Positions 15,252 to 54,695 of a stretch of DNA of 64,000 nt are shown piece by piece. Made by a program: the position numbers and the translations under genes. Below the pieces are notes generated by a model. It saw only the letters and a program-made list of their open reading frames with translations, ran no database searches and was not told the origin of the DNA. Within the stretch, counting starts at the first letter, position 1. The number at the start of each line of letters is the position of its first letter. This DNA comes from Piromyces finnis finn (lineage: Eukaryota; Fungi; Neocallimastigomycota), in assembly GCA_002104945.1 (NCBI GenBank), contig MCFH01000038.1, positions 372,001-436,000 on the forward strand, written 5' to 3'.

Positions 15252-17039
15252 ATGAATGGTTATCAATTTGTTGTCACCCTTGCTGCTTCTTGTGGCGGTC
15301 TTCTTTATGGATATGAAATTGGTGTAATGAATGTTGTTCTTGTAATGGACGCATTTCGTACTTTTTTTGACTTTTCTCAATGGAAAGGTGTGATGGAAAA
15401 TGAAATGAAGGATGATATTAAAAATACATTTGTCACGGATAAATCTACTGTTTATCGTCAATTAGAGGAAAAGGGTAAAAAACCTTTCTTGGAAGGTTTT
15501 ATTACTTCAAGTTTTCTTTTTGGAGCTATTTTTGGAGCTCTCATTTCTTCCTACCTTTCCAATACATCAAGTAGTCAAAAAATCATCATGGTGACTGGTT
15601 TAATTTTTTCTTTGGGTAGTCTTATTCAAAGTGCTACTTTTTATTCTTTTATATTACTTTCGTTGGGTCGTTTCATTTCTGGTATGGCTATTGGTGGAAT
15701 AAGTGTCCTTTGCCCTACTTATATTGCTGAAGTTGCTCCAGCAAGAATTAGAAATACGGTGATTTCTTGTTATCAATTCATGGTTGCTCTTGGTATTGTG
15801 GTGGCTACTGCTATTAATGGTCTTATTTGGTATCATACTAATGTTAATCCAACAGCAACAGCATCAACAACAACCCAAAGTTCAGCTAATCAAACCACCA
15901 CTATAAATAATATGGAATGGAGATTGGCCTTAGGCCTACAAATTGTTCCGGGATTACTTCTTACTCTTTTTACGTATTTCCTTCCAACCTCTCCAAGATA
16001 CCTTTGTAGTCAAAATAAAGATAAAGAGGCTATTCGTGTATTAGCCAAACTTAATTCAACTTCCTCAAATGATTTGTTGGTTCAAGAAGAGTACAAAGCA
16101 ACTATTGCTAGTGTTACTGGTATGGAAGCATTAGGTAAATCTACCTATAAAGAACTTTTTAATCGTAGAAATGGTCGTCGTTCTTTTACCGCCTTCTTTA
16201 TTCAATTTTTCCAACAATGCACCGGTATAAATGCTATTCTTTACTATCAAACTCAATTATATCAAGGTGTTGGTTTTAGTAAAATCATGTCTACTGTAAT
16301 TCTTCCCATCCTAAATAATTGTGTTTATTTCGTTTCTTCCTTTATTGGTATGTTCCATGTTCAAAGAATGGGTCGTAAACAATTATTGATTATTGGTGGT
16401 GTTCTTCTTTTATTAATAAATATTTCAATAAGTTCCACCGCAAATCATACCCTTGATCATTTCAAATTTCGTTTAAATGAAGAAATAGATTGTACCAGGG
16501 ATAAACATGATATGGCGTATTTTTCTAAAGAATTACAATATACTTTTTATGGTAATGATTGTCATGAAACATTAGTGACATGTTCAGATCAACGTAATGT
16601 TATTTCTTATGATCCAACAACAACAACAACAACCGTTCCTTTCACCTCAGATCAACTATATACAGTATGTCATGAAATGGATGCCTTGAGATATGCAAAG
16701 GGTAATTTTAGACGTTATCTTTTTGCTGGTAGTTTATTTGCTTTTATGTTTGTTTACGGTTGCACCTGGGATCCAGTTCCTAAAGTGTATCAAGCTGAAT
16801 TATTTCCACTTCGTATGAGGGTTAAAGGAATGACATTTAGTACGGTATCTCAATTCATTTCCAGTTGGATTATTGTTCTAGTCACTCCATTACTATTAAA
16901 AGTATGGGGTATGCATGTCTTTCTTCTTTTTTCAGCATGCTGTTATCTAGCGTTAATGTTTACCCTTTTCTTTTGTGTAGAAAGTAATGGACTTAGTATG
17001 GAAGAAATAGATGAAGAAATGATGTTTATTAAATCTTAG
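15252..17039 (+). CDS. MFS sugar porter family transporter, intronless, with atypical motifs
   Basis: 595 aa, 12-TM layout. Motifs: GGLLYGYEIG, LGRFISGMAIGG, PTYIAEVAP, PTSPRYL, QFFQQCTGINAILYY, GRKQLL, YQAELFPLRMR, ESNGLSMEEID. Confidence 0.93.
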   Translation: MNGYQFVVTLAASCGGLLYGYEIGVMNVVLVMDAFRTFFDFSQWKGVMENEMKDDIKNTFVTDKSTVYRQLEEKGKKPFLEGFITSSFLFGAIFGALISSYLSNTSSSQKIIMVTGLIFSLGSLIQSATFYSFILLSLGRFISGMAIGGISVLCPTYIAEVAPARIRNTVISCYQFMVALGIVVATAINGLIWYHTNVNPTATASTTTQSSANQTTTINNMEWRLALGLQIVPGLLLTLFTYFLPTSPRYLCSQNKDKEAIRVLAKLNSTSSNDLLVQEEYKATIASVTGMEALGKSTYKELFNRRNGRRSFTAFFIQFFQQCTGINAILYYQTQLYQGVGFSKIMSTVILPILNNCVYFVSSFIGMFHVQRMGRKQLLIIGGVLLLLINISISSTANHTLDHFKFRLNEEIDCTRDKHDMAYFSKELQYTFYGNDCHETLVTCSDQRNVISYDPTTTTTTVPFTSDQLYTVCHEMDALRYAKGNFRRYLFAGSLFAFMFVYGCTWDPVPKVYQAELFPLRMRVKGMTFSTVSQFISSWIIVLVTPLLLKVWGMHVFLLFSACCYLALMFTLFFCVESNGLSMEEIDEEMMFIKS

Positions 17040-27939: not shown

Positions 27940-29490
27940 ATAATTTTCTCGGGAAGTTAGGATTGTGTTATGGTATCGATAATACTATCACTATCATATC
28001 ATTATCTGAAGTGATATTACCAGAAGAATTATTATCTGTAGCATTATTAGAATTATCGCTTGAAGAAATTAATGCTTTGTAAAATTCAGTCGGAATACCA
28101 TCTGGACCAGATACTTTATAATTAGGAGTAGAGAGGATAGCCGACTTGACTTCATCAATATTAATATCTTGGTTGATATCCCATTCGTCAAGCATAGGGA
28201 GTAAAAAAACGTTTATTCGTTGGTTCTTCATACCAACCCTTCAAATCAAGACTTAACATCACTTGGATCATATGCAAGATTTTCGAGATGATCATGCTAC
28301 ACCTCTAGTTGTTCTTCTGTAACAACAACTAAGGCTCCACTTTTATTTTTAATTGGTTGAGCAATAAAGAAAGTATCTTTTCCAATTTTTGCAGTTTTCT
28401 TGGTCCATTTCCAGGCCTTCTTAGGATTATGACTCTTCATATACTCACAACCTGTTTTAATCCAATGAAGACATTCTTGTTTCCTGTGCTCATTACATCT
28501 TTTGTGGATATAATCGATGAGCTTACGGTAGATTTTAATCCTTTTCATGGTTTCATCTATATCATAAATTCTTTCTTTTTTAAATCTCCTTTACAAGGAG
28601 ACTCTGTATTCGATCCAGAACCATTACCAGTTTCTTGGAAACACAAAAATAATGGTTTGAAAATAGCTGTGGAAATAACTAATACTATCTTTTTTTTCGT
28701 GATTCCACCCATTAGTGTTCCAACTAAGATAAAAAGAAAAGTTATCAGGCTTGTTGAACGAGGAAGGATCGTTGCTATTACTATTATAGTCATCATTATT
28801 AATGGACGATGCGTCAGAGACGTTAGTTGAACTATTATTAGATGGCTGTGTAACTGAAGAACTATCGACTATTGAACTGTTATCAGAGTTGATAGAACTA
28901 TTAGAATTAATTGTTGAATGTTGAGGTTGTAATTGTGTTTGTTATAGATCTGGAATATTTTTAATGTTGAAGATCTTGTTGAAGTTGAATTTGATGAGAT
29001 TGTTGAATTGATTGTTGATATTTATTGGAAACTAAAAAATAAATCCATGCTTGAGTGAAGGAAAAGTGTATTTGTGATTCCTTTTACTACGAGCTGAAAA
29101 GGAAATTGAAGCAACGGAAAGTTTCTTCTTTAAGGTGTGTAAGATTTTATTTCAGTCTTTCATTGAACCATAAACCTTGACTAAGAAAAAGTGATCATTG
29201 AAATTCTTAAAATATTAAACAATAATAACACTGAATTAAATTTATTCTTCAGAATAATCTCGAGTTTTTTTTTTTTTCATAGCTTATAATTGACCATGAT
29301 CGAATACTACGGCGGATAAAGAAGGAGCAAATGTTTTTAAATTTTAGGATTAATTTAATTAAAATTAGAATACTTGTTACATAAAAAATAAAATTAAAAA
29401 TAAAAACAAAAGTAAAATAAAAAAAAAAAAAAATAGGTGTAAATAAACACAAATGAATATAAAAATACAATGAAAATGCTAAAGTTGACT
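27940..29490 (-). mobile_element. Degenerate 5'/middle fragment of the same LINE family (APE endonuclease N-terminus, linker, start of RT) preceded by a 3'-UTR-like segment
   Basis: APE-like LVGTLMGGITKKK...FLCFQET (~28620-28735), linker KAWKWTKKTAK...QPIKNKSG, and YKVSGPDGIPTEFYKAL. The segment 28060-28290 is highly similar to 20290-20510. The segment 29330-29460 resembles the family 3' UTR. Confidence 0.8.
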
Positions 29491-29976: not shown

Positions 29977-31317
29977 TTAGTACCAATGCCATGCGCCTTG
30001 GTTCCATTGGTTGTTACCCCATTGATTGTTTCCTTGATCCCATGGGTTACCACCTTGGTTACCGCCTTGGTTCCATTGATTGTTACCCCATTGGTTTCCA
30101 CCTTGGTTCCATTGATTGTTTCCTTGATCCCATGGATTACCACCTTGGTTCCATTGGTTGTTACCCCATTGATTTCCACCTTGATTCCATTGGTTATTTC
30201 CTTGATCCCATGGGTTACCACCTTGGTTCCATTGGTTGTTACCCCATTGATTGTTACCTTGATCCCATGGATTACCACCTTGGTTACCACCTTGGTTCCA
30301 TTGGTTGTTACCCTGATCCCATGGGTTACCACCTTGGTTACCGCCTTGGTTCCATTGATTGTTACCTTGATCCCATGGATTACCACCTTGGTTACCGCCT
30401 TGGTTCCATTGATTGTTACCTTGATCCCATGGATTACCACCTTGGTTACCACCTTGGTCGAAATTAGCACCTTGGTTATTATCAGATTGGGCTGGAGCTT
30501 GTTCAGTTGGGGCTTGTTCAGTTGGAGCTTGTTGAGTTGGGGCTTGTTGAGTTGGAGCACCACCAGCAGCACCACCACCATTACCTTGACCAATATAAAC
30601 CTTAGCATATGGGAAATCTGCGGTACCACTAGTACCAGCACCGTTACTACCAGCTTCACCTAAAATTTTAGCTTCGTGCATTTTACCCATAGTCATACCA
30701 AGCTTTTCCCATTGGGCAAAGTGAGCTGAAATATCAATTGTACCACATTCACGTGGAGTTTGACGAATACTGAAATATTGCTTGAAAGTGGTATCTCCAT
30801 CAATACTTGGACCAGTACGAGTGTTTTCGAAAACAGTATATTGAGCACCATCAATAGTGAAATCACCGTGTTTCTTGTTACCAACCCAATCACCTGGACG
30901 AGATGGACTAAGCCAGTTATCAACAATATAGTATTCTACAAGTGGACTTCTGGTCCAACCGTAAATACCAACATAAGAATAATCAACATTAGCAATGTTT
31001 TGCTTGACAAGTTTGAAGTCAGCATACATATGACCAATTTGAGAGTGAGATTGAGTACTGTCGAAGGAAAGACCGGAACGACATAAATAATCCTTAGCAT
31101 TAGAGAAAGAACAAGAGAAAGAACCATCAGAATAGAAAGTAGCACTGTTGTTACCACTATCAGCCCACATTTCATAACCAACACCACCAATGGAACCAAC
31201 CTTATTTCCGGTTTCCTTAACACTTTGACCAGAGTGAGAAGCACCACTACAGAAACTTTGAGCTAAAGTAGAAGTAGCTAAAGATAAAACAACTGGAATG
31301 AACTGAGAAAATTTCAT
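29977..31317 (-). CDS. Secreted endo-1,4-beta-xylanase, glycoside hydrolase family 11, with Q/N/G/W repeat tail
   Basis: Signal peptide MKFSQFIPVVLSLATSTLA. GH11 motifs YVGIYGWTRSPLVEYYIVDNW, GPSIDGDTTFKQYFSIR, HFAQWEKLGM and GEAG (both catalytic Glu present). It closely resembles, from memory, the Neocallimastix XynCDBFV-type domain. Intronless. Confidence 0.96.
   Translation of the reverse strand: MKFSQFIPVVLSLATSTLAQSFCSGASHSGQSVKETGNKVGSIGGVGYEMWADSGNNSATFYSDGSFSCSFSNAKDYLCRSGLSFDSTQSHSQIGHMYADFKLVKQNIANVDYSYVGIYGWTRSPLVEYYIVDNWLSPSRPGDWVGNKKHGDFTIDGAQYTVFENTRTGPSIDGDTTFKQYFSIRQTPRECGTIDISAHFAQWEKLGMTMGKMHEAKILGEAGSNGAGTSGTADFPYAKVYIGQGNGGGAAGGAPTQQAPTQQAPTEQAPTEQAPAQSDNNQGANFDQGGNQGGNPWDQGNNQWNQGGNQGGNPWDQGNNQWNQGGNQGGNPWDQGNNQWNQGGNQGGNPWDQGNNQWGNNQWNQGGNPWDQGNNQWNQGGNQWGNNQWNQGGNPWDQGNNQWNQGGNQWGNNQWNQGGNQGGNPWDQGNNQWGNNQWNQGAWHWY
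29985..30470 (-). repeat. Coding tandem repeat (GGNQ / GGNPWDQ / GNNQWNQ modules) forming the xylanase C-terminal tail
   Basis: Reshuffled 12-21 bp modules, e.g. CAAGGTGGTAACCAAGGCGGTAACCCATGGGATCAAGGTAACAATCAATGGAAC, repeated ~9 times. Confidence 0.9.
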
Positions 31318-49132: not shown

Positions 49133-49604
49133 TTCTTTTCTTTTTTAATAATAATTTCTTTTCATCTCTTGTTTTTATATAAAATATATAAAATAACAAG
49201 AAAATAGTAAAAAAGTAAAAAAAAAAAACAAAATTCTAAAATGTTACACAAAACTATAAATAATTTTTTTTATATTATTAAAAAGGTAGCACAAAAATTT
49301 GGTTGGATATTGATAATTAAAAAATTAAATATAAAAACAATATAAATTTAATTTTTAATTTATTTTTAAAATTTTATGAATTTATTAATTATGTGTTCTA
49401 CTTTAAAGGAAATGTATTTATTGTTTAAAAAACAATAAATAGAATAAGATAGCAACTATTAGGATTTAATTATATTTACATTTACATTATTGATAATATA
49501 TATACATTATATTTATACTAGTTTAATTAATAGTTAATAGATAAATGGCTTTTATTATGAAAATTAAAAGAAAAAAAAGCATGTATATATTCATTCATAT
49601 ATAT

Positions 49605-52600
49605 TTATTCATTACTTGATGTCATATATTCTGATAAGATAATATCCAAATCAACTGGACGAATATATTTAACACCATCAATACATTTATAAGGTAAATA
49701 CGATACAAAAGCAATATCCCCTTCAGAAAGTTCATTAACAGATTTCACAAGATTACCATTCCTAGATTGAACATGAAGTTTTATTAAATTGTATAGACTA
49801 TCCTTTAATGGATTAATGTAATAATAGAAAATACCATTCATTAGTCTTTTAGTATTTTCAATACGAACGCAGGAACCATCCTTTGTTAATGGAGTATCTA
49901 CCCAAATAAATTCGTTTGTTTTACAATCAAATATAACAGGAATAGTGGAAGTACTATTGGAATTAAGATCCAATTTTTGCTTTACTGTCTTTGGCTCAAA
50001 GAATTCATTGCTATTTAAATCACTTCTTTCCATCCATCCAAATTTACAATTTTCAAGATTTTTAAATTTTACCCCACTGTAAGAAATAACACTAACAGCT
50101 ATATACCGAGCACCACAAATAAAAACTTGTTTAGGGTCAAAATCAATAAACTCAGCAGCACCATTACCATTCACGTCTCCTCCATTTATAAAATCACCAG
50201 AATGATAAATTTTAAATCTACTATTACTTAAATTATTAAATGAAACATGCCCTAAATCTACCAAGTTTTCATTATAAATAATAATTGAAAGATCAATATC
50301 AATTATTCTTGTTTTAGTATTTGTCCACCAAATAAATAATCGAATTTTATTGAGGGTTTCCTTTTTTATGTTATTTTTATGTATTTCAATATATTCTAAA
50401 GAATTTTCAATTTTTTGATTAAACATTTCTATGTCTCTGTCTAGACTTTTAATATTTTCAGCAATACAGTATTTTTCAAATTCATTAGCAGATTCTCTAA
50501 TGCTGTTAAGTTGATCATTCCATTCTTGTTTTTTGTGGTTAATTTCATCTATTTTATTTCTATAGACCGAGATTTTGTAATTATTTTCTTCTATAATATT
50601 TTCTAATTCTTCATCTGTCAATTTCTTGTAGGAAATGTCAAAACGAGAACCCTTGATGTAAGTTTCTAATGTACTGTTGGAACTTCTTACATCAAGAGGA
50701 ATTACTTGCTTTTTTAGATCTTCACTAATATAGACATTATTCATTTTTGGCTTATTTTCAAAATGATTCATCAATGCCATATCACATATGTTACATATTT
50801 TCTCACATAATTCCAAATCTAGTTTTCCTTTTACACGGTTTTTTATATACATTTTAGGAGTGGTTCCTTTAATCAAAAATACTCTAAGTCTTAATTTTTC
50901 ACTACGTTTTTGGAAATATCCTTTCAAACTGAGTAAAACCTTAACAGAAACTTTTGATGCAATTTGTTCAAAAATTTCAAGAGTCTTTTTATGATCACCA
51001 ATTTTAACTAAAAGTTCATCAAGCTTTCTTGCAAAAATACCAGGTCTTTGAGCTAAAAGTGTTAAAGCTTGATCATACTTTTTCTTATCTAATAAATTAT
51101 TAACACGATACATATATCCTTGGAAGGGATGAGTTTCTTTATAATTTTTGATTTTTTCGTTTAATTCTGAAAGTTTTACATGGTATTCTTTTTGAATTTC
51201 ATTTAGAGAATCTATATCAAATTTATTTTTACAAAGAAGGGAATGATTGTTATAGACTAAATCTAAATTTTTATTTACTTCTTCACCAAGATCAAGTTGT
51301 TTTGCTTCTTCAATGGTTTTATTGATAGCCATATTATCATATAAACTTATAATTCTTGGACATCTTTTATAGGATATATATAAATCCTTTATAGTTCTAA
51401 TAGTATTAGATTTTTTTTGAATATCCTTTTTAACACGAACATATTTATAGGAACCAACCATATCATCTACTAGATCTGGATAAAACTTAGAAAAACTCTT
51501 TGGATGAATTCTTTCACATACCCTTTCCCACAAAATTTTATGTTTATGAAAGTCTTCTACTCTATTTTGACAATTATTTAATAAAGCCATAATCATTCTC
51601 CTTTCTTTGTTTGAAAAAGATTTAAATTTTTTCATTTTATTACAGTTGAAATTGCTTACTAATACTTCTTTCTTTTCTAAGGTAGCGCTTTTTCCCGACA
51701 TTACAGCAACTAATCTTAATACATCAGTGACTGTTTTAAAGTATGGAATAATCCTTTCTATTGGTAGGTCCTTATTATTCGTTAAAACCAAATTAATAAT
51801 TATTGCGAGATTTTCTTTATTTGGAAAACTTTCTGGTAAAGTATCCATATATTTTTCATAATATGTAAAATAATATTTTATATCCTGGATATCTTTTTGA
51901 GAAATTGATTCTGCAGCACTCATTAAATTTTTCATTATTTCATGAAGATCTTCTTCTTTTCCTATAGTAACATTTTTATAGACAACATCAATAGGTTCAT
52001 GTTTTCTTACCAAATTGACATTTTGAACATTTGTTTCTCTTAACCAGTAATATACTATATCATCAATTATATTTGTACAATACTTTACTTCAATAATATC
52101 TATTGGAAAGTTTGGGAATTTAGGTCTATAAGATTTATTATGACTTCCCACATTTTCTTTTAATGTTGGAATAATAAAATCATATAAACCTTTAACTTTT
52201 TCCTTTGATAAACAAGCAACAATATTAAACAATTTTTCATCCATATGATAGCCATAATTTTTCATTTCCTCATTCAAAGTTAATGCAAGTGTCATACGAC
52301 GTTTGATTTTCTTTGTTTCTTTTATCATAATCGTATGGAGTTTTTCGAAATCAATTGATAAATCTTTTATACTTTTATTTTTGTCTAAGAATGAGTAATC
52401 TTCTTTATTCGTAAATTCAATTAAGGTATTATCAACCTTAATTGTAACAGAAAACTTATCACATTGTTCAATTTTACAATGGTCCTTAAGTTCTTTGGTT
52501 CTGGAAATATGTTTCTCAACAGCATTTTCATAAATTTTATTGATATTAGCTTTATCATCAACATCAATAATAACCTTGTTTCTTCTCAAAAATAAAATTT

Positions 52601-52634
52601 TTTGTAATTTAGTGTGTAAGGAACTGTTGTTCAT
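49605..52634 (-). CDS. Intronless 1009-aa bacterial-like protein: large alpha-helical region plus C-terminal TerD-like domain
   Basis: Single open ORF. Motifs FKTVTDVLRL, FKSFSNKERR, ERIHP, LLAQRPGIFARKLDELL and the TerD-like IDIDLS...HSGDFINGG...AAEFIDFD...FEPKTVKQKLDL...IPVIFDC...IWVD match my recollection of a family of ~700-850-aa bacterial TerD-associated proteins. Confidence 0.8.
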   Translation of the reverse strand: MNNSSLHTKLQKILFLRRNKVIIDVDDKANINKIYENAVEKHISRTKELKDHCKIEQCDKFSVTIKVDNTLIEFTNKEDYSFLDKNKSIKDLSIDFEKLHTIMIKETKKIKRRMTLALTLNEEMKNYGYHMDEKLFNIVACLSKEKVKGLYDFIIPTLKENVGSHNKSYRPKFPNFPIDIIEVKYCTNIIDDIVYYWLRETNVQNVNLVRKHEPIDVVYKNVTIGKEEDLHEIMKNLMSAAESISQKDIQDIKYYFTYYEKYMDTLPESFPNKENLAIIINLVLTNNKDLPIERIIPYFKTVTDVLRLVAVMSGKSATLEKKEVLVSNFNCNKMKKFKSFSNKERRMIMALLNNCQNRVEDFHKHKILWERVCERIHPKSFSKFYPDLVDDMVGSYKYVRVKKDIQKKSNTIRTIKDLYISYKRCPRIISLYDNMAINKTIEEAKQLDLGEEVNKNLDLVYNNHSLLCKNKFDIDSLNEIQKEYHVKLSELNEKIKNYKETHPFQGYMYRVNNLLDKKKYDQALTLLAQRPGIFARKLDELLVKIGDHKKTLEIFEQIASKVSVKVLLSLKGYFQKRSEKLRLRVFLIKGTTPKMYIKNRVKGKLDLELCEKICNICDMALMNHFENKPKMNNVYISEDLKKQVIPLDVRSSNSTLETYIKGSRFDISYKKLTDEELENIIEENNYKISVYRNKIDEINHKKQEWNDQLNSIRESANEFEKYCIAENIKSLDRDIEMFNQKIENSLEYIEIHKNNIKKETLNKIRLFIWWTNTKTRIIDIDLSIIIYNENLVDLGHVSFNNLSNSRFKIYHSGDFINGGDVNGNGAAEFIDFDPKQVFICGARYIAVSVISYSGVKFKNLENCKFGWMERSDLNSNEFFEPKTVKQKLDLNSNSTSTIPVIFDCKTNEFIWVDTPLTKDGSCVRIENTKRLMNGIFYYYINPLKDSLYNLIKLHVQSRNGNLVKSVNELSEGDIAFVSYLPYKCIDGVKYIRPVDLDIILSEYMTSSNE

Positions 52635-53107
52635 AATGGAAAATTTATATAAAATGAAAGTAATGATAAAATATTATATAGAATAGTAAAGTTTTTTTTG
52701 GTTACTATTGATGTATAATAATAATATCAATATCAATAAAATTGAGATTGAAACTATTGATGAAATGTGCTACATAATGGTGAAGGAATATACCTTTTAT
52801 ATAAAAAAATTACTAGATAGTTCTTATAATCATTTTTTTAAGTAACTTGATTATTATAGTTTTATTTTTCATAATAAAATACTAATTTAAATTTATTCTG
52901 AACCACCATCATAGTTTAATATAATATGGTTTAGTTAAAAAATAATTTTTTTTATAATAATTAACATTATTAAGTTAATGAACCATTTAATTAATAGGTC
53001 TTTATTATAATTGTCACAATACCATCATTATCATCATCATTGTTATATTTAAGTATTTAAAACTTTTATTTATAAAATCAAAAAATTAAAAAAACAAAAA
53101 TCAAAAA

Positions 53108-53620: not shown

Positions 53621-54695
53621 TTAAAAAGAAAATTCTTTTTTAAGTGGTAAACTTAATACAAGTTCAGATTTATCTTTTTTCCATTTTGCATTTCCTTCAT
53701 TTTCGAGTATAGGTTTTGGTAATGGTAAATTTAAAAGACTAGTATTTCAAATTAGATATAAAAAGAAAAAATTTAAAATAAAATTCAAATAATTTTGTTA
53801 TTAAGGAATGGTTCGTAAAACTTTGTAAATAATTATTAATATAATAAAAAATGTAATATACTAACTATGTTGAAGTTCTGACATCAATTTTATTTTCATA
53901 AACAGTTAAATCAATATCAGAAATCTTTTTAACACCCGGTAATTGAATTGTAATTACCATTTCATCACAATCATGAAAACCTGGAGTTTTACCACTCATA
54001 CCCAGATATATATCTTCTGTAGTTACTTTTTGTCTATAAATTATATCATATCTTTGATAATTATTTTTATTATTATTATATACAAATACATATATAATAG
54101 AGGAAAAAAAAAAAAGATATGAAAATATTTAAAATATAAATTATTATTAGGATTAGTATTTAATTAATTATAAATAAAATTAAATTACTTTTATTAAAAC
54201 GTCAGTAAACCTACTCTGGTTCTGTTCTTGGATCTTCCTCAATGTATACTTCATCTATATCTTCATCATCCCATATATCATTCTTATTCTTTTTTTTATT
54301 ATTTTGATGATGCTCATTTACAATATCTTCAACAGTAGTTGTTTTCTTTTTTTTATCACCAATTAAACCAGGAGTAAATTTTGATTCTTCTTCCTTTAAA
54401 TTTTTATTATTATCATTTATGAAAAAATTTAAATAAATATATATATATATATTTAAATATAGGTTATAAGATTATTAATATAAATAATATATTTAGTCTT
54501 TATTGATTTATATCTTCTTCATTTTTTTTTTTTTTATCAATTTTTATTATATCAACTACATTTAAAAATACATTTTAATTATATTTATTATTAAGTATAT
54601 CGTGGTATCAATATTACTTTGTATTTCTTTTCAGCTTGATTTTCACTTTCTTTTAATAAATTAGATAAAGCTAAAATTGAAGAACCTCCATTCAT
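53621..54695 (-). CDS. DNAAF6: Dynein axonemal assembly factor 6 (PIH1D3/Twister) homolog
   Basis: The spliced product includes SSILALSNLL, IWDDEDI..EEDPRTEPEYDIIYRQKVTTEDIYLGMSGKTP...MVITIQLP...DVRTSTYLLNLPLPKPI...GNAKW...LVLSLPL, the CS/PIH1 C-terminal pattern. Confidence 0.85.

What the first reader, a model, noticed from the sequence alone, without database searches (positions are those of the whole stretch)
49605..52634. Intronless bacterial-type TerD-associated giant protein embedded in a fungal chromosome
A 3-kb single-exon ORF lies between intron-rich eukaryotic genes. Its motif order matches, from memory, a poorly characterised bacterial family seen in Firmicutes, Bacteroidetes and Actinobacteria: ILxRR N-terminus, P.FPNFP, FKT.TDVLRL, RPG.FAR.LD.LL, then a TerD-like domain. 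TerD-domain systems are linked to stress response, metal sensing and phage-related phenotypes. This looks like a horizontally acquired, intact gene of unknown function in a eukaryote, perhaps a stress or anti-parasite factor. It is the strongest candidate for a novel system in this window.
Basis: partly seen in the sequence, partly recalled or inferred. Interest (0 to 1): 0.78.

Follow-up and report, generated by a model that had tools for sequence, protein, structure and literature searches.

The report
Bacterial Ro60-like TerD gene in fungus
An anaerobic gut fungus carries and apparently transcribes an intact gene acquired from gut Firmicutes; its protein joins a Ro60-like helical ring to a TerD domain, and in bacterial and phage relatives the gene sits beside Y-RNA-like genes, pointing to RNA quality control rather than metal stress.

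Summary
The 1009-aa single-exon ORF (49605-52634, minus strand) is real and intact. Three runs each hold one gene-sized, unspliced, transcript-like contig over it.

The gene is horizontally acquired. All anaerobic-fungal copies form one clade (support 100) nested among gut Bacillota and large-phage sequences. Their sister is a long-form gene in a Lachnospiraceae-type chromosome that already has the three "fungal" insertions. The family then duplicated in the fungi. The scan's first stage also flagged a paralog on another piece of this genome (s1-180681).

New here:
- The N-terminal core resembles Ro60/TROVE rings in three structure libraries. Sequence tests for TROVE fail.
- The prokaryotic and phage homologs are flanked, always on the same strand, by YrlA-type Y-RNA-like genes: 182 covariance-model hits, and 21 of 30 pairs covary.
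- They often sit within tRNA arrays or RNA-repair cassettes.

The best reading is a Ro60-like RNA-binding protein with TerD in place of the vWA domain. No convincing partner RNA was found in the fungal window, so the fungal function is inferred. A "TerD_like" transfer from Firmicutes into tortoise-gut fungi was published in 2024; it may be this family.

The parts
49605..52634 (-). Complete single-exon ORF, 1009 aa, including the stop codon at 49605-49607.
   Evidence: It keeps all 30 columns that are invariant across 67 family members. AlphaFold2 model: mean pLDDT 89.9, pTM 0.85.
49395..52811 (-). Probable unspliced mRNA (the longest transcript-like contig). The 5' UTR is about 177 nt and the 3' UTR about 210 nt.
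   Evidence: whole contigs of 3417 nt (X2, 49395-52811), 3254 nt (X3, 49493-52746) and 3004 nt (X4, 49696-52699) lie collinear with 0 differences and no joints. The runs come from 2 studies. That they are RNA runs is the tool's guess.
52581..52634 (-). N-terminal conserved helix (aa 1-18) with the ILFLRR motif.
   Evidence: R17 is nearly invariant. Helix 8-18 in the model.
52350..52580 (-). Insertion 1 (aa 19-95): a small alpha/beta module absent from the ~700-aa forms.
   Evidence: Alignment A1. It is shared with the long-form bacterial sisters P0125 and P0150 (A4). pLDDT 84-96.
51480..52349 (-). Helical core, first part (aa 96-385), with the PNFP, KEN and TDVLRL blocks; a Ro60/TROVE-like ring.
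   Evidence: The equivalent core of homolog P0055 matches the Ro60 rings 9l5y_B (Z 8.5, 263 aa), 2nvo_A (Z 7.9) and 1yvp_A (Z 6.2). Foldseek probabilities are 1.0, 0.97 and 0.72. The first non-family hit in BFVD is a TROVE protein.
51120..51479 (-). Insertion 2 (about aa 386-505): a helical insert.
   Evidence: It is present, and longer, in P0125 and P0150.
50619..51119 (-). Helical core, second part, plus a small beta/alpha segment (aa 506-672), with the RPGxFARxLD block.
   Evidence: This part is included in the Ro60 structural alignments of P0055 residues 148-468.
50358..50618 (-). Insertion 3 (aa 673-759): a long antiparallel helical hairpin just before the TerD domain.
   Evidence: helices 674-712 and 718-757. 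One search gives only generic coiled-coil hairpin matches. It is shared with P0125 and P0150.
49815..50357 (-). TerD-fold domain (aa 760-940) with invariant D781, H811-S812-G813-D814, G825, E828 and D831.
   Evidence: Z 14.8 and 12.7. Invariant columns.
49608..49814 (-). C-terminal alpha/beta tail (aa 941-1009).
   Evidence: Conserved Y948, L950, R958, G960, D973 and F976.

Best explanation
The ORF encodes a transcribed, intact member of a large prokaryotic and phage protein family. The family is related to NCBIfam NF041916 (but without the RING domain), corresponds to phrog_33734, and is named 'TerD family protein' by NCBI.

Origin. An ancestor of today's anaerobic gut fungi acquired the gene once from a Lachnospiraceae-type gut bacterium or one of its mobile elements. 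The donor version was a long form that already carried three insertions. The gene then duplicated within the fungi.

Architecture. A Ro60/TROVE-like helical ring is followed by a TerD beta-sandwich, in the position where Ro60 has its vWA domain.

Proposed mechanism (partly inferred). As in Ro60, the ring binds structured small RNAs. In bacteria and phages these are Y-RNA-like transcripts encoded right next to the gene. Their conserved closing helix would dock on the protein. Their tRNA-like domain would recruit tRNA-processing, repair or decay enzymes. The TerD domain would supply a divalent-cation-dependent docking or sensing surface.

In the fungus, the protein most likely serves non-coding RNA quality control or repair, with a partner RNA still to be found.

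Shown versus inferred, with my estimates:
- Shown: the ORF, homology, phylogeny, the TerD fold, adjacency of a covarying YrlA-type RNA, and transcript-like contigs.
- Inferred: homology (rather than convergence) to Ro60, RNA binding, Ca2+ binding, and any function in the fungus.
- Probabilities: HGT from Bacillota about 0.9; TerD fold about 0.97; Ro60-like RNP role for the prokaryotic family about 0.7; RNA-related role for the fungal copy about 0.5.
For: Family and origin:
- NF041916 hit at E 2.4e-86 and phrog_33734 at E 1.7e-44.
- End-to-end alignment with ~700-aa homologs.
- The family has 3378 clusters at 50% identity.
- Fungal sequences form one clade (FastTree 100; IQ-TREE SH-aLRT 100). 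The sisters P0125/P0150 (support 100) share all three insertions.
- The sister contig carries UvrC and a PurA that is 74-79% identical to those of Blautia, Lachnospiraceae and Acetatifactor.
- Paralogs occur in Piromyces, Neocallimastix and Orpinomyces on contigs of up to 2.6 Mb.
- GC3 of the ORF equals that of a neighbouring gene.

Expression: gene-sized collinear contigs in 3 runs.

Fold: TerD at Z 14.8. The three Ro60 representatives rank 1, 2 and 5 of 48,161 chains and are the only long alignments. Foldseek PDB and BFVD agree.

Partner RNA:
- The motif GGCTAT-N6-8-YTYCCTYCT has 200 copies, all on the gene's strand, and 199 lie within 1 kb of the homolog.
- An Rfam YrlA hit starts 33 nt after the stop codon in L026 (E 7e-5).
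- RNAalifold predicts 30 pairs, 21 with compensatory changes.
- Covariance model R1 gives 182 hits, all on the gene's strand. Of these, 48 are full-length (63-143 bits) in 38 loci, 21 of which were not in the seed, and they include the distant actinophage Weasels2.
- Hits of any class occur in about 25 of the 32 lineages searched (my tally).
- R1 and Rfam YrlA also hit the known Y RNA site beside the genuine Ro60 of phage Bxz1, with similar scores.

Context:
- 13 of 22 viral lineages have a tRNA within 2 kb, and tRNA density falls 4-5-fold with distance.
- A CCA-adding enzyme, Rnl1, RtcB or Thg1 lies within 10 kb in 40 of 116 loci.
- The sister contig carries an RNA-repair cassette.
- Background on Ro60, Y RNA, RtcB and PNPase biology: PMC4201824, PMC12135203, PMC7824862.
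Against: - No sequence evidence for TROVE: there is no Pfam TROVE hit, and hhalign against a TROVE profile scores 17.1, below the reversed controls at 19.9 and 21.7.
- The Ro60 structural Z-scores (6.2-8.5) fall in the range that helical repeats can reach without homology. I could not inspect the coordinates, so I did not check ring closure or where the TerD domain sits.
- The Y-like RNAs are not universal. The full-length form occurs in 9 of 33 lineages.
- No Y-like RNA was found in the long-form sister contigs, in XacN1, or convincingly in the fungal window.
- The flanking elements could instead be cis-regulatory parts of the mRNA.
- RNA-repair neighbours occur in only 9 of 33 lineages.
- The fetched loci are biased toward close relatives of the query.
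- Whether the run contigs are RNA is the tool's guess.
- Ca2+ binding by the TerD domain was judged by eye from a remembered motif.
Confidence: 0.6

Rival explanations
1. A Ter-type sensor unrelated to RNA. The TerD domain binds Ca2+ or a nucleoside-derived signal. The helical region is only a scaffold. The protein acts in a stress or conflict response, as proposed for ter operons.
For: The TerD fold is the strongest structural match. TerD domains are proposed to be ligand sensors in Ter systems (passages in PMC7824862 and PMC7159879). Actinobacterial relatives carry an N-terminal RING domain, which suggests signalling or ubiquitin-like chemistry.
Against: None of the neighbourhoods examined shows terZABCDE, TerC, TelA or PRTase partners. 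The gene-specific, strand-specific Y-RNA-like flanks and the Ro60-like core are left unexplained.
Confidence: 0.15
2. The flanking conserved elements are cis-acting parts of the gene's own transcript (leader and trailer structures, autoregulatory protein-binding sites, or processing signals), not separate Y RNAs. The protein's real targets would then be something else.
For: Every copy is on the gene's strand and within about 1 kb. One degenerate copy lies about 45 nt upstream of the ribosome-binding site. Short units without the tRNA-like domain are common.
Against: The full-length units have a complete YrlA-type tRNA-like domain. They score against Rfam YrlA as well as the genuine Bxz1 Y RNA does. 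Several units occur in tandem on both sides of the gene, which resembles small-RNA gene arrays. Even on this reading, the protein would still be an RNA-binding protein.
Confidence: 0.2
3. In the fungus the gene was domesticated as an antiviral or anti-parasite (or general stress) factor. That role would be independent of its ancestral one.
For: The family has expanded into multiple paralogs, with about 7 gene models in Piromyces sp. E2. These include forms with a tandem-duplicated N-terminal module, a pattern often seen in conflict genes. The family is phage-associated.
Against: There is no direct evidence. No defence-system neighbours occur in the window. The PADLOC library was not scanned. 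The reading is compatible with, rather than opposed to, an RNA-surveillance mechanism.
Confidence: 0.15
4. The gene is not a transfer. It is either an ancient, vertically inherited eukaryotic gene, or a bacterial or phage contaminant, or a chimeric assembly.
For: The DNA-run contigs laid on the locus were fragmentary, so no single DNA read set spanning both flanks was seen.
Against: - The contig is 539 kb with fungal genes and fungal composition.
- Codon GC3 matches that of a neighbouring gene.
- Transcript-like contigs run into the AT-rich flanks.
- Orthologs lie on Mb-scale contigs of four other anaerobic fungi.
- The fungal clade is nested inside prokaryotic diversity with full support.
- No other named eukaryote appears among the best hits.
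Confidence: 0.03

Closest known systems
Ro60 / Rsr (TROVE + vWA_Ro60), including phage Ro60 (Thermus phage phiLo, 9l5y; mycobacteriophage Bxz1 gp220)
   Same: The helical-ring core is the best and only long structural match in PDB and BFVD. A YrlA-type RNA with a permuted tRNA-like domain is encoded next to the gene on the same strand. Both occur in large phages near tRNA and RNA-repair genes.
   Different: There is no detectable sequence similarity. The vWA/MIDAS domain is replaced by a TerD beta-sandwich plus a C-terminal tail. The partner RNA's closing helix carries a different conserved motif (GGCUAU...UCCUUCU / CUUUCC). The fungal and long-form members carry three insertions and have no detected Y RNA.
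TerD proteins (Klebsiella TerD 2kxt; Streptomyces SCO6318 2qz7; Pfam PF02342)
   Same: Same fold for aa 760-939 (Z 14.8 and 12.7). An acidic/Gly-rich loop motif (HSGD...GG...G.G..E..D) resembles the TerD Ca2+-binding loop; this is by eye and from memory.
   Different: The Pfam TerD model does not hit. Here the domain is the C-terminal part of a 700-1000-aa protein, not a ~190-aa stand-alone protein. There is no ter operon context.
NCBIfam NF041916, the MXAN_6230/SCO0854 family of RING domain-containing proteins
   Same: Clear homology over the core and TerD region (E 2.4e-86; E 1e-130 for the 700-aa forms). The ESM Atlas places them as structural neighbours.
   Different: The score of 290.7 is below the 600-bit cut-off. 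There is no RING domain (no Prok-RING_4 or zf-C3HC4 hit). The fungal copy has extra insertions.
phrog_33734 (phage protein family of unknown function) and the cultured-phage homologs (Weasels2 gp266, XacN1 ORF396, Xoo-sp13, SCTP-2, LpeD 'cytoplasmic protein')
   Same: Same family. Weasels2 also has the adjacent Y-like RNA.
   Different: The fungal copy matches in three stretches because of its insertions, and it is encoded in a eukaryotic chromosome.
The 'TerD_like' HGT event (donor Firmicutes) listed for tortoise-gut anaerobic fungi, Table 1 of PMC10978972
   Same: Same label, same donor phylum and same recipient phylum.
   Different: Identity with this family could not be verified, because the supplement holds no sequences or identifiers. 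The paper scores the event as absent from mammalian-gut fungi, whereas this family is present in Piromyces, Neocallimastix and Orpinomyces.

Membership tests
TerD (Pfam PF02342) | TerD beta-sandwich fold | tested here: met
   2qz7_B Z 14.8, rmsd 2.4 A over 156 aa; 2kxt Z 12.7; Foldseek probability 1.0, TM 0.72 (normalised by target).
TerD (Pfam PF02342) | Match to the family's sequence profile above threshold | tested here: not met
   no PF02342 hit at E <= 1 or <= 0.1; no PDB TerD hit by sequence or by profile.
TerD (Pfam PF02342) | Ca2+-binding loop residues and actual Ca2+ binding | not testable with these tools
   Invariant D781, S812-G813-D814, G825, E828 and D831 resemble the TerD loop motif as I remember it. 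No residue-level structural alignment was available.
TerD (Pfam PF02342) | Ter operon context (terZABCDE, TerC, TelA) | tested here: not met
   Neighbourhoods show none.
Ro60 / TROVE (PF05731 + PF25045) | Sequence-profile match to TROVE | tested here: not met
   no hit; hhalign score 17.1 (E 0.4) against reversed controls of 19.9 and 21.7. The TROVE profile was narrow (>= 55% identity to Bxz1 gp220).
Ro60 / TROVE (PF05731 + PF25045) | HEAT-like helical ring fold | tested here: inconclusive
   Ro60 chains rank 1, 2 and 5 of 48,161 (Z 8.5, 7.9, 6.2; 245-274 aa aligned); probabilities 1.0, 0.97 and 0.72 with E 0.04-0.4. TROVE protein at E 3e-3. The result is consistent, but the Z-scores are moderate for a helical protein, and ring closure was not inspected.
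Ro60 / TROVE (PF05731 + PF25045) | C-terminal vWA domain with MIDAS | tested here: not met
   A TerD fold occupies that position. There is no vWA_Ro60 hit.
Ro60 / TROVE (PF05731 + PF25045) | Y RNA encoded adjacent to the gene | tested here: met
   Met for prokaryotic and phage members. Not met for the fungal window or the long-form sisters.
Ro60 / TROVE (PF05731 + PF25045) | Binding of Y RNA or misfolded RNA | not testable with these tools
   Needs biochemistry.
NCBIfam NF041916 RING_SCO0854 | Score at or above the curated cut-off (600 bits) | tested here: not met
   290.7 bits; 432-454 bits for the 700-aa homologs.
NCBIfam NF041916 RING_SCO0854 | N-terminal RING domain | tested here: not met
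   no RING Pfam hit. RING-bearing clusters carry Prok-RING_4, and this protein does not.
phrog_33734 | Significant profile match | tested here: met
   E 1.7e-44 for the window protein and 1e-88 to 1e-95, full length, for close homologs.
Horizontally transferred gene in Neocallimastigomycota | Recipient clade nested within donor diversity, with support | tested here: met
   (support 100 for the fungal clade and for its bacterial sister). Shared insertions.
Horizontally transferred gene in Neocallimastigomycota | Absence from other eukaryotes | tested here: inconclusive
   The only named eukaryotic hits among the best 120 and 150 are Neocallimastigomycota. Weaker hits beyond those lists were not inspected.
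Horizontally transferred gene in Neocallimastigomycota | Physical linkage to host genes, host-like composition, and expression | tested here: met
   plus transcript-like contigs. That the runs are RNA is a guess.

The most novel reading that the evidence does not exclude
This family may be an unrecognised second branch of Ro60-type ribonucleoproteins. In it, a TROVE-like ring is joined to a TerD domain instead of a vWA domain. It would have its own class of YrlA-like partner RNAs with a distinct conserved closing helix. It is abundant in large gut phages and in Firmicutes and Actinobacteria. One long-form lineage was captured by anaerobic gut fungi, then kept, transcribed and expanded, giving a eukaryote a bacterial-type RNA surveillance module.
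Probability: 0.5. Interest if true: 0.8.

Novelty: new variant of a known kind. Interest (0 to 1): 0.7.

Why it matters
Ro60 and its Y RNAs are a long-studied but still poorly understood RNA-surveillance system and a major human autoantigen. Bacterial and phage versions have been found only by searching for TROVE domains.

This family has thousands of clusters and has been annotated only as "TerD family" or hypothetical. If it is a Ro60 analogue with its own Y-like RNAs, three things follow:
- The known range of such ribonucleoproteins in gut phages and Firmicutes grows considerably.
- There is a natural experiment in swapping the metal-binding domain (TerD for vWA).
- The conserved RNA motif and the adjacent protein can be tested directly for binding.

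For anaerobic fungi, it turns an anonymous entry in an HGT list into a concrete, testable hypothesis. It also shows the event is present and expanded in mammalian-gut genera, with a Lachnospiraceae-type long-form donor lineage.

Tried and rejected
- Sequence searches for TerD or any solved relative found nothing useful: Pfam, PDB phmmer and PDB profile.
- hhalign of the N-terminal core against a TROVE profile was not significant against reversed controls. The in-register TDVLRL / THRDLLRL motifs are noted but not relied on.
- The ESM Atlas feature and shape searches returned only the family itself.
- I first read the closest relatives as phage genes. Extending the sister contig showed UvrC and a cellular PurA of Lachnospiraceae type, so I dropped 'phage donor' in favour of 'Lachnospiraceae-type bacterium or its mobile elements'.
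- I first took the GGCTAT...CTTCCTTCT element for a promoter. Covariation showed it is the 5' strand of an RNA helix.
- No strictly conserved protein partner emerged. RNA-repair genes are near the homolog in only 9 of 33 lineages. The two conserved unknown genes next to the long-form sisters have no Pfam or PHROG hits.
- Rfam at gathering thresholds found no Y RNA. Only permissive scans and a custom model did.
- The fungal window gave only weak covariance-model hits, which I do not accept.
- The supplement of PMC10978972 has no details of its TerD_like event.
- The 2012 Ter-system paper is not held in the library.
- Cluster look-ups could not name the organism of the sister contig.
- Pfam on the immediate neighbours of the ORF gave nothing.
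- The PADLOC library was not scanned.


Full report
OBSERVATION

The window holds one uninterrupted ORF at 49605-52634 on the minus strand. It is 1009 aa long with an ATG start. The genome is about 17-21% GC, and the ORF, like other coding parts of the window, is 20-27% GC. At this composition a stop codon is expected about every 12 codons, so the open frame cannot be chance (my calculation).

The window protein keeps all 30 invariant columns of A2.

The window is a genuine anaerobic-fungus chromosome piece:
- It encodes an ammonium transporter, a Sugar_tr/MFS transporter and a GH11 xylanase.
- The protein's contig is 539 kb.

However, those other genes are also single long ORFs, and the immediate neighbours have no domain hits. 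So the contrast 'intronless among intron-rich genes' is not established.

EXPRESSION

Three runs from two studies each contain exactly one contig that lies collinear on the locus with zero differences and no joints:
- 49395-52811 (3417 nt)
- 49493-52746 (3254 nt)
- 49696-52699 (3004 nt)

The tool guesses that these are RNA runs. Two of the contigs span the whole ORF and end 110-210 nt beyond it on each side; the third starts 65 nt upstream of the ATG and ends about 90 nt short of the stop. Contigs bounded in this way are what an unspliced mRNA would give, not genomic contigs. The run type remains a guess.

WHAT FAMILY IT IS

- Pfam finds nothing, and in particular no TerD.
- NCBIfam gives one strong but sub-threshold hit to NF041916, the MXAN_6230/SCO0854 RING-domain family: E 2.4e-86, 290.7 bits against a cut-off of 600. 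The RING domain is absent.
- PHROGs gives phrog_33734, of unknown function.
- The word search finds paralogs in Piromyces finnis, Piromyces sp. E2, Neocallimastix californiae and Orpinomyces. After those come hundreds of ~700-aa proteins at E about 1e-110, one of which NCBI names 'TerD family protein [Lachnospiraceae bacterium]'.
- The exhaustive representative search counts 3378 clusters at 50% identity (E <= 1e-3) and 1769 at E <= 1e-30.
- The unusually long top hits are again Piromyces paralogs.

The family is abundant in large phages. It occurs on 59 IMG/VR contigs, mostly 100-450 kb. It also occurs in cultured phages: Rhodococcus Weasels2, Xanthomonas XacN1 and Xoo-sp13, Salicola SCTP-2, Mycobacterium WXIN, Rhodobacter RcXuper and Lactobacillus LpeD. 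In GTDB species genomes the close relatives are almost all gut or rumen Lachnospiraceae and Clostridia. These include the isolates Coprococcus aceti and Ruminococcus sp. YE282.

ORIGIN OF THE FUNGAL GENE

The fungal proteins align end to end with the ~700-aa forms. They differ by three insertions: aa 19-95, about aa 386-505, and aa 673-759.

I built two trees: a FastTree tree of 239 sequences, and an IQ-TREE tree (LG+C20+F+G4) of 75 sequences. Both put all fungal sequences in one clade (support 100). That clade has two old subfamilies. Its sister is the pair of unnamed ~1146-aa proteins P0125 and P0150 (support 100). The whole group is nested among sequences from gut Bacillota and IMG/VR phages. 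P0125 and P0150 share all three insertions (A4), so the long form existed before the transfer.

Their contigs are low-GC (24-25%) with dense same-strand genes. P0125 lies in a cassette with a tRNA nucleotidyltransferase, an HD protein, a T4 Rnl1-type RNA ligase, a metallophosphoesterase and a MYG1 exonuclease. P0150 has a RusA gene upstream and the same downstream gene order up to the CCA-adding enzyme.

I first read this as a phage. Extending the P0125 contig revealed a full UvrC and a cellular PurA that is 74-79% identical to those of Blautia, Lachnospiraceae and Acetatifactor MAGs. The nearest known relative therefore sits in a Lachnospiraceae-type chromosome. The donor is best described as such a bacterium or one of its mobile elements. 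A phage donor is possible but not shown.

Codon GC3 of the fungal ORF (0.179) equals that of a neighbouring gene (0.175).

A 2024 paper lists 'TerD_like', donor Firmicutes, among 35 HGT events in tortoise-gut anaerobic fungi. It marks the event as not recorded in mammalian-gut fungi (PMC10978972). The supplement gives no identifiers. The paper's event is probably this family, in which case the transfer itself is already known. My data add that the family is present and multi-copy in mammalian-gut genera. The 2019 HGT catalogue preprint does not mention TerD.

STRUCTURE

An AlphaFold2 model of the whole protein, built from the 67-sequence alignment, is confident: pLDDT 89.9, pTM 0.85.
- Residues 760-939 are a TerD fold: 2qz7_B Z 14.8, rmsd 2.4 A over 156 residues; Klebsiella TerD Z 12.7; Foldseek E 1.8e-4, probability 1.0.
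- Residues 673-759 form a long helical hairpin that attracts generic coiled-coil matches.

To see the core, I folded residues 1-468 of the insertion-free homolog P0055 (pLDDT 87.4). Against 48,161 PDB representatives, the only long alignments are Ro60 proteins, ranked 1, 2 and 5:
- Thermus phage phiLo Ro60: Z 8.5, 263 aa aligned.
- Deinococcus Rsr: Z 7.9, 245 aa.
- Xenopus Ro: Z 6.2, 274 aa.

Foldseek on PDB also puts phiLo Ro60 first (probability 1.0, E 0.04), followed by a 'Trove domain' entry and Rsr. In BFVD the first hit outside the family is a TROVE-domain protein of a crAss-like phage (E 3e-3, probability 1.0).

The sequence-level tests fail. Pfam TROVE does not hit. hhalign against a profile of 120 TROVE proteins gathered from mycobacteriophage Bxz1 gp220 scores no better than the reversed controls.

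So the core is Ro60-like in fold. Homology is unproven, and the Z-scores are moderate for a helical protein. The TerD domain stands where Ro60 has its vWA domain.

GENOMIC CONTEXT OF THE PROKARYOTIC AND PHAGE MEMBERS

Many viral loci have the gene inside the phage's tRNA array on the same strand. After dereplication at 60% identity, 13 of 22 viral lineages have a tRNA within 2 kb. tRNA density falls from 0.56 per kb to about 0.1-0.2 per kb with distance from the gene. A CCA-adding enzyme, Rnl1, RtcB or Thg1 lies within 10 kb in 40 of 116 loci, which is 9 of 33 lineages.

The gene is flanked by long non-coding gaps, with medians of 420 nt upstream and 300 nt downstream. These gaps hold a two-block motif, GGCTAT-N6-8-YTYCCTYCT:
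- 200 copies in 72 of 111 loci.
- Every copy is on the gene's strand.
- 199 copies lie within 1 kb of the gene, and none lie elsewhere in the +-10 kb flanks.

A permissive Rfam scan then gave a full-length match to YrlA (bacterial Y RNA-like) starting 33 nt after the stop codon in L026. The score is 33.8 bits with E 7e-5. The match shows the permuted T-arm-then-D-arm layout typical of YrlA. A regex for that layout hits only the gene's strand, and 28 of 37 hits lie within 1 kb downstream of the gene. The connector hairpin differs in sequence between lineages while keeping its pairing.

A MAFFT alignment of 17 such regions (A5) gives an RNAalifold structure of 30 pairs, 21 of them with compensatory double changes. 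In this structure the 'motif' is the 5' strand of the closing helix. Its variable N7 block covaries with a 3' complement, which is followed by a conserved CUUUCC.

A covariance model built from this alignment (R1) was searched over 1.74 Mb of fetched loci and found 182 hits at E <= 0.01, all on the gene's strand:
- 48 are full-length at 63-143 bits, in 38 loci. Of these loci, 21 were not in the seed.
- They include the distant Rhodococcus phage Weasels2, whose protein is about 29% identical to the gut homolog P0055.
- A second class of 80-135 nt keeps the closing helix but lacks the tRNA-like domain.
- Ordinary tRNAs give only partial hits.

As a positive control, R1 and Rfam YrlA both hit the site 185-265 nt upstream of the genuine Ro60 gene of Bxz1. 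The Rfam score there (32.5 bits) is no better than next to this family (33.8 and 35.0 bits).

By lineage, the full-length RNAs occur in 9 of 33 lineages, including the largest. Some R1 hit occurs in about 25 of the 32 lineages searched (my tally).

No paper in the library links YrlA or Y RNA with TerD proteins. The Aravind-lab jumbo-phage review mentions canonical ROT/TROVE proteins and stand-alone TerD in phages separately, not a fusion.

WHAT THIS MEANS FOR THE FUNGAL GENE

A Ro60-like fold, a YrlA-type RNA next door, and tRNA and RNA-repair surroundings together form the signature of Rsr/Ro60 systems (PMC4201824; PMC12135203). I therefore commit to the following reading. The family is a Ro60-like RNA-binding module with TerD in place of vWA, and the fungal protein inherited that activity.

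The weak points are stated plainly:
- There is no sequence evidence for TROVE homology.
- The long-form sister contigs, XacN1 and the fungal window have no convincing R1 hit.
- With filters off, the window gives 22 bits at 28073-28153 and 18 bits at 53919-54014. The latter lacks the motif. The former has an exact CGGCUAU and a closing helix, but it lies 21 kb away and is weak.
- The fungal partner RNA, if any, is therefore unknown, and the fungal function is inferred.

The paralog expansion and the tandem duplication of the N-terminal module in one subfamily would fit a conflict role. In P0121, aa 1-400 are 35% identical to the following module (E 5e-76), which agrees with scan note s1-180681.

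VERDICT

HGT and the TerD fold hold. The 'TerD-associated stress system' framing does not.
- The transfer itself is probably already published as an unannotated list entry.
- The new parts are the Ro60-like architecture, the associated Y-RNA-like gene arrays in the donor family, the identification of a long-form Lachnospiraceae-type sister, and the evidence of expression and expansion in mammalian-gut fungi.

Noticed in passing
L019:15616-16213 and L019:14341-14407: A full-length ROOL RNA (RF03087, 301.6 bits) and a 'skipping-rope' RNA (RF02924) lie inside the phage tRNA array, a few kb downstream of the homolog on an IMG/VR contig.
   Followed up: no
L042:7311-7622 and L061:7352-7751: Phage-encoded tmRNA genes sit next to the tRNA arrays that surround the homolog. 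L061 corresponds to a >=112-kb viral region of the rumen isolate Ruminococcus sp. YE282 (L099).
   Followed up: no
L052:13223-13299; L018:9367-9443; L001:14382-14456: Unusual phage tRNAs: a CUA-anticodon tRNA called tRNA-Pyl, which may be a suppressor, and two tRNAs with four-base anticodons.
   Followed up: no
window:28073-28153 (-): The best hit of the Y-like RNA model in the fungal window scores 22 bits (E about 0.0075 for 64 kb). It has an exact CGGCUAU, a UUCCG and a closing helix, but no tRNA-like domain, and it lies 21 kb from the gene. It may be chance.
   Followed up: partly
P0121 (Piromyces sp. E2), aa 1-400 versus aa 400-800: One fungal subfamily (P0121, P0131, P0173, P0176) carries a tandem duplicate of the N-terminal ~400-aa module: 35% identity, E 5e-76. 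This matches scan note s1-180681 on another piece of this genome.
   Followed up: partly
L116:4575-6603 and L118:4481-6357: Two genes of unknown function (about 240 and about 390 aa, with no Pfam or PHROG hit) keep their order between the long-form gene and the CCA-adding enzyme on two contigs. The long-form proteins of those contigs fall in different 50%-identity clusters.
   Followed up: partly
Actinobacterial and myxobacterial members (NF041916; Atlas cluster with Prok-RING_4): These relatives fuse a RING domain to the same core. By loose analogy, eukaryotic Ro60 is found together with the RING E3 ligase Ro52/TRIM21. This is only an analogy and was not tested.
   Followed up: no
L003:5140-6183 and related loci: A reverse transcriptase (RVT_1) lies about 4 kb upstream of the homolog in 17 loci of one gut-phage lineage. 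Thg1 genes are present in 26 loci.
   Followed up: no
window:7131-8684, 15252-17039, 29977-31317: The ammonium transporter, sugar transporter and GH11 xylanase genes are each a single long ORF, so intron-poor genes are common in this window.
   Followed up: partly
L120:2268-2421 and L120:5245-6903: The genuine Ro60 gene of mycobacteriophage Bxz1 (gp220) also lies about 3 kb from tRNA genes. This mirrors the context of the TerD-bearing family.
   Followed up: no
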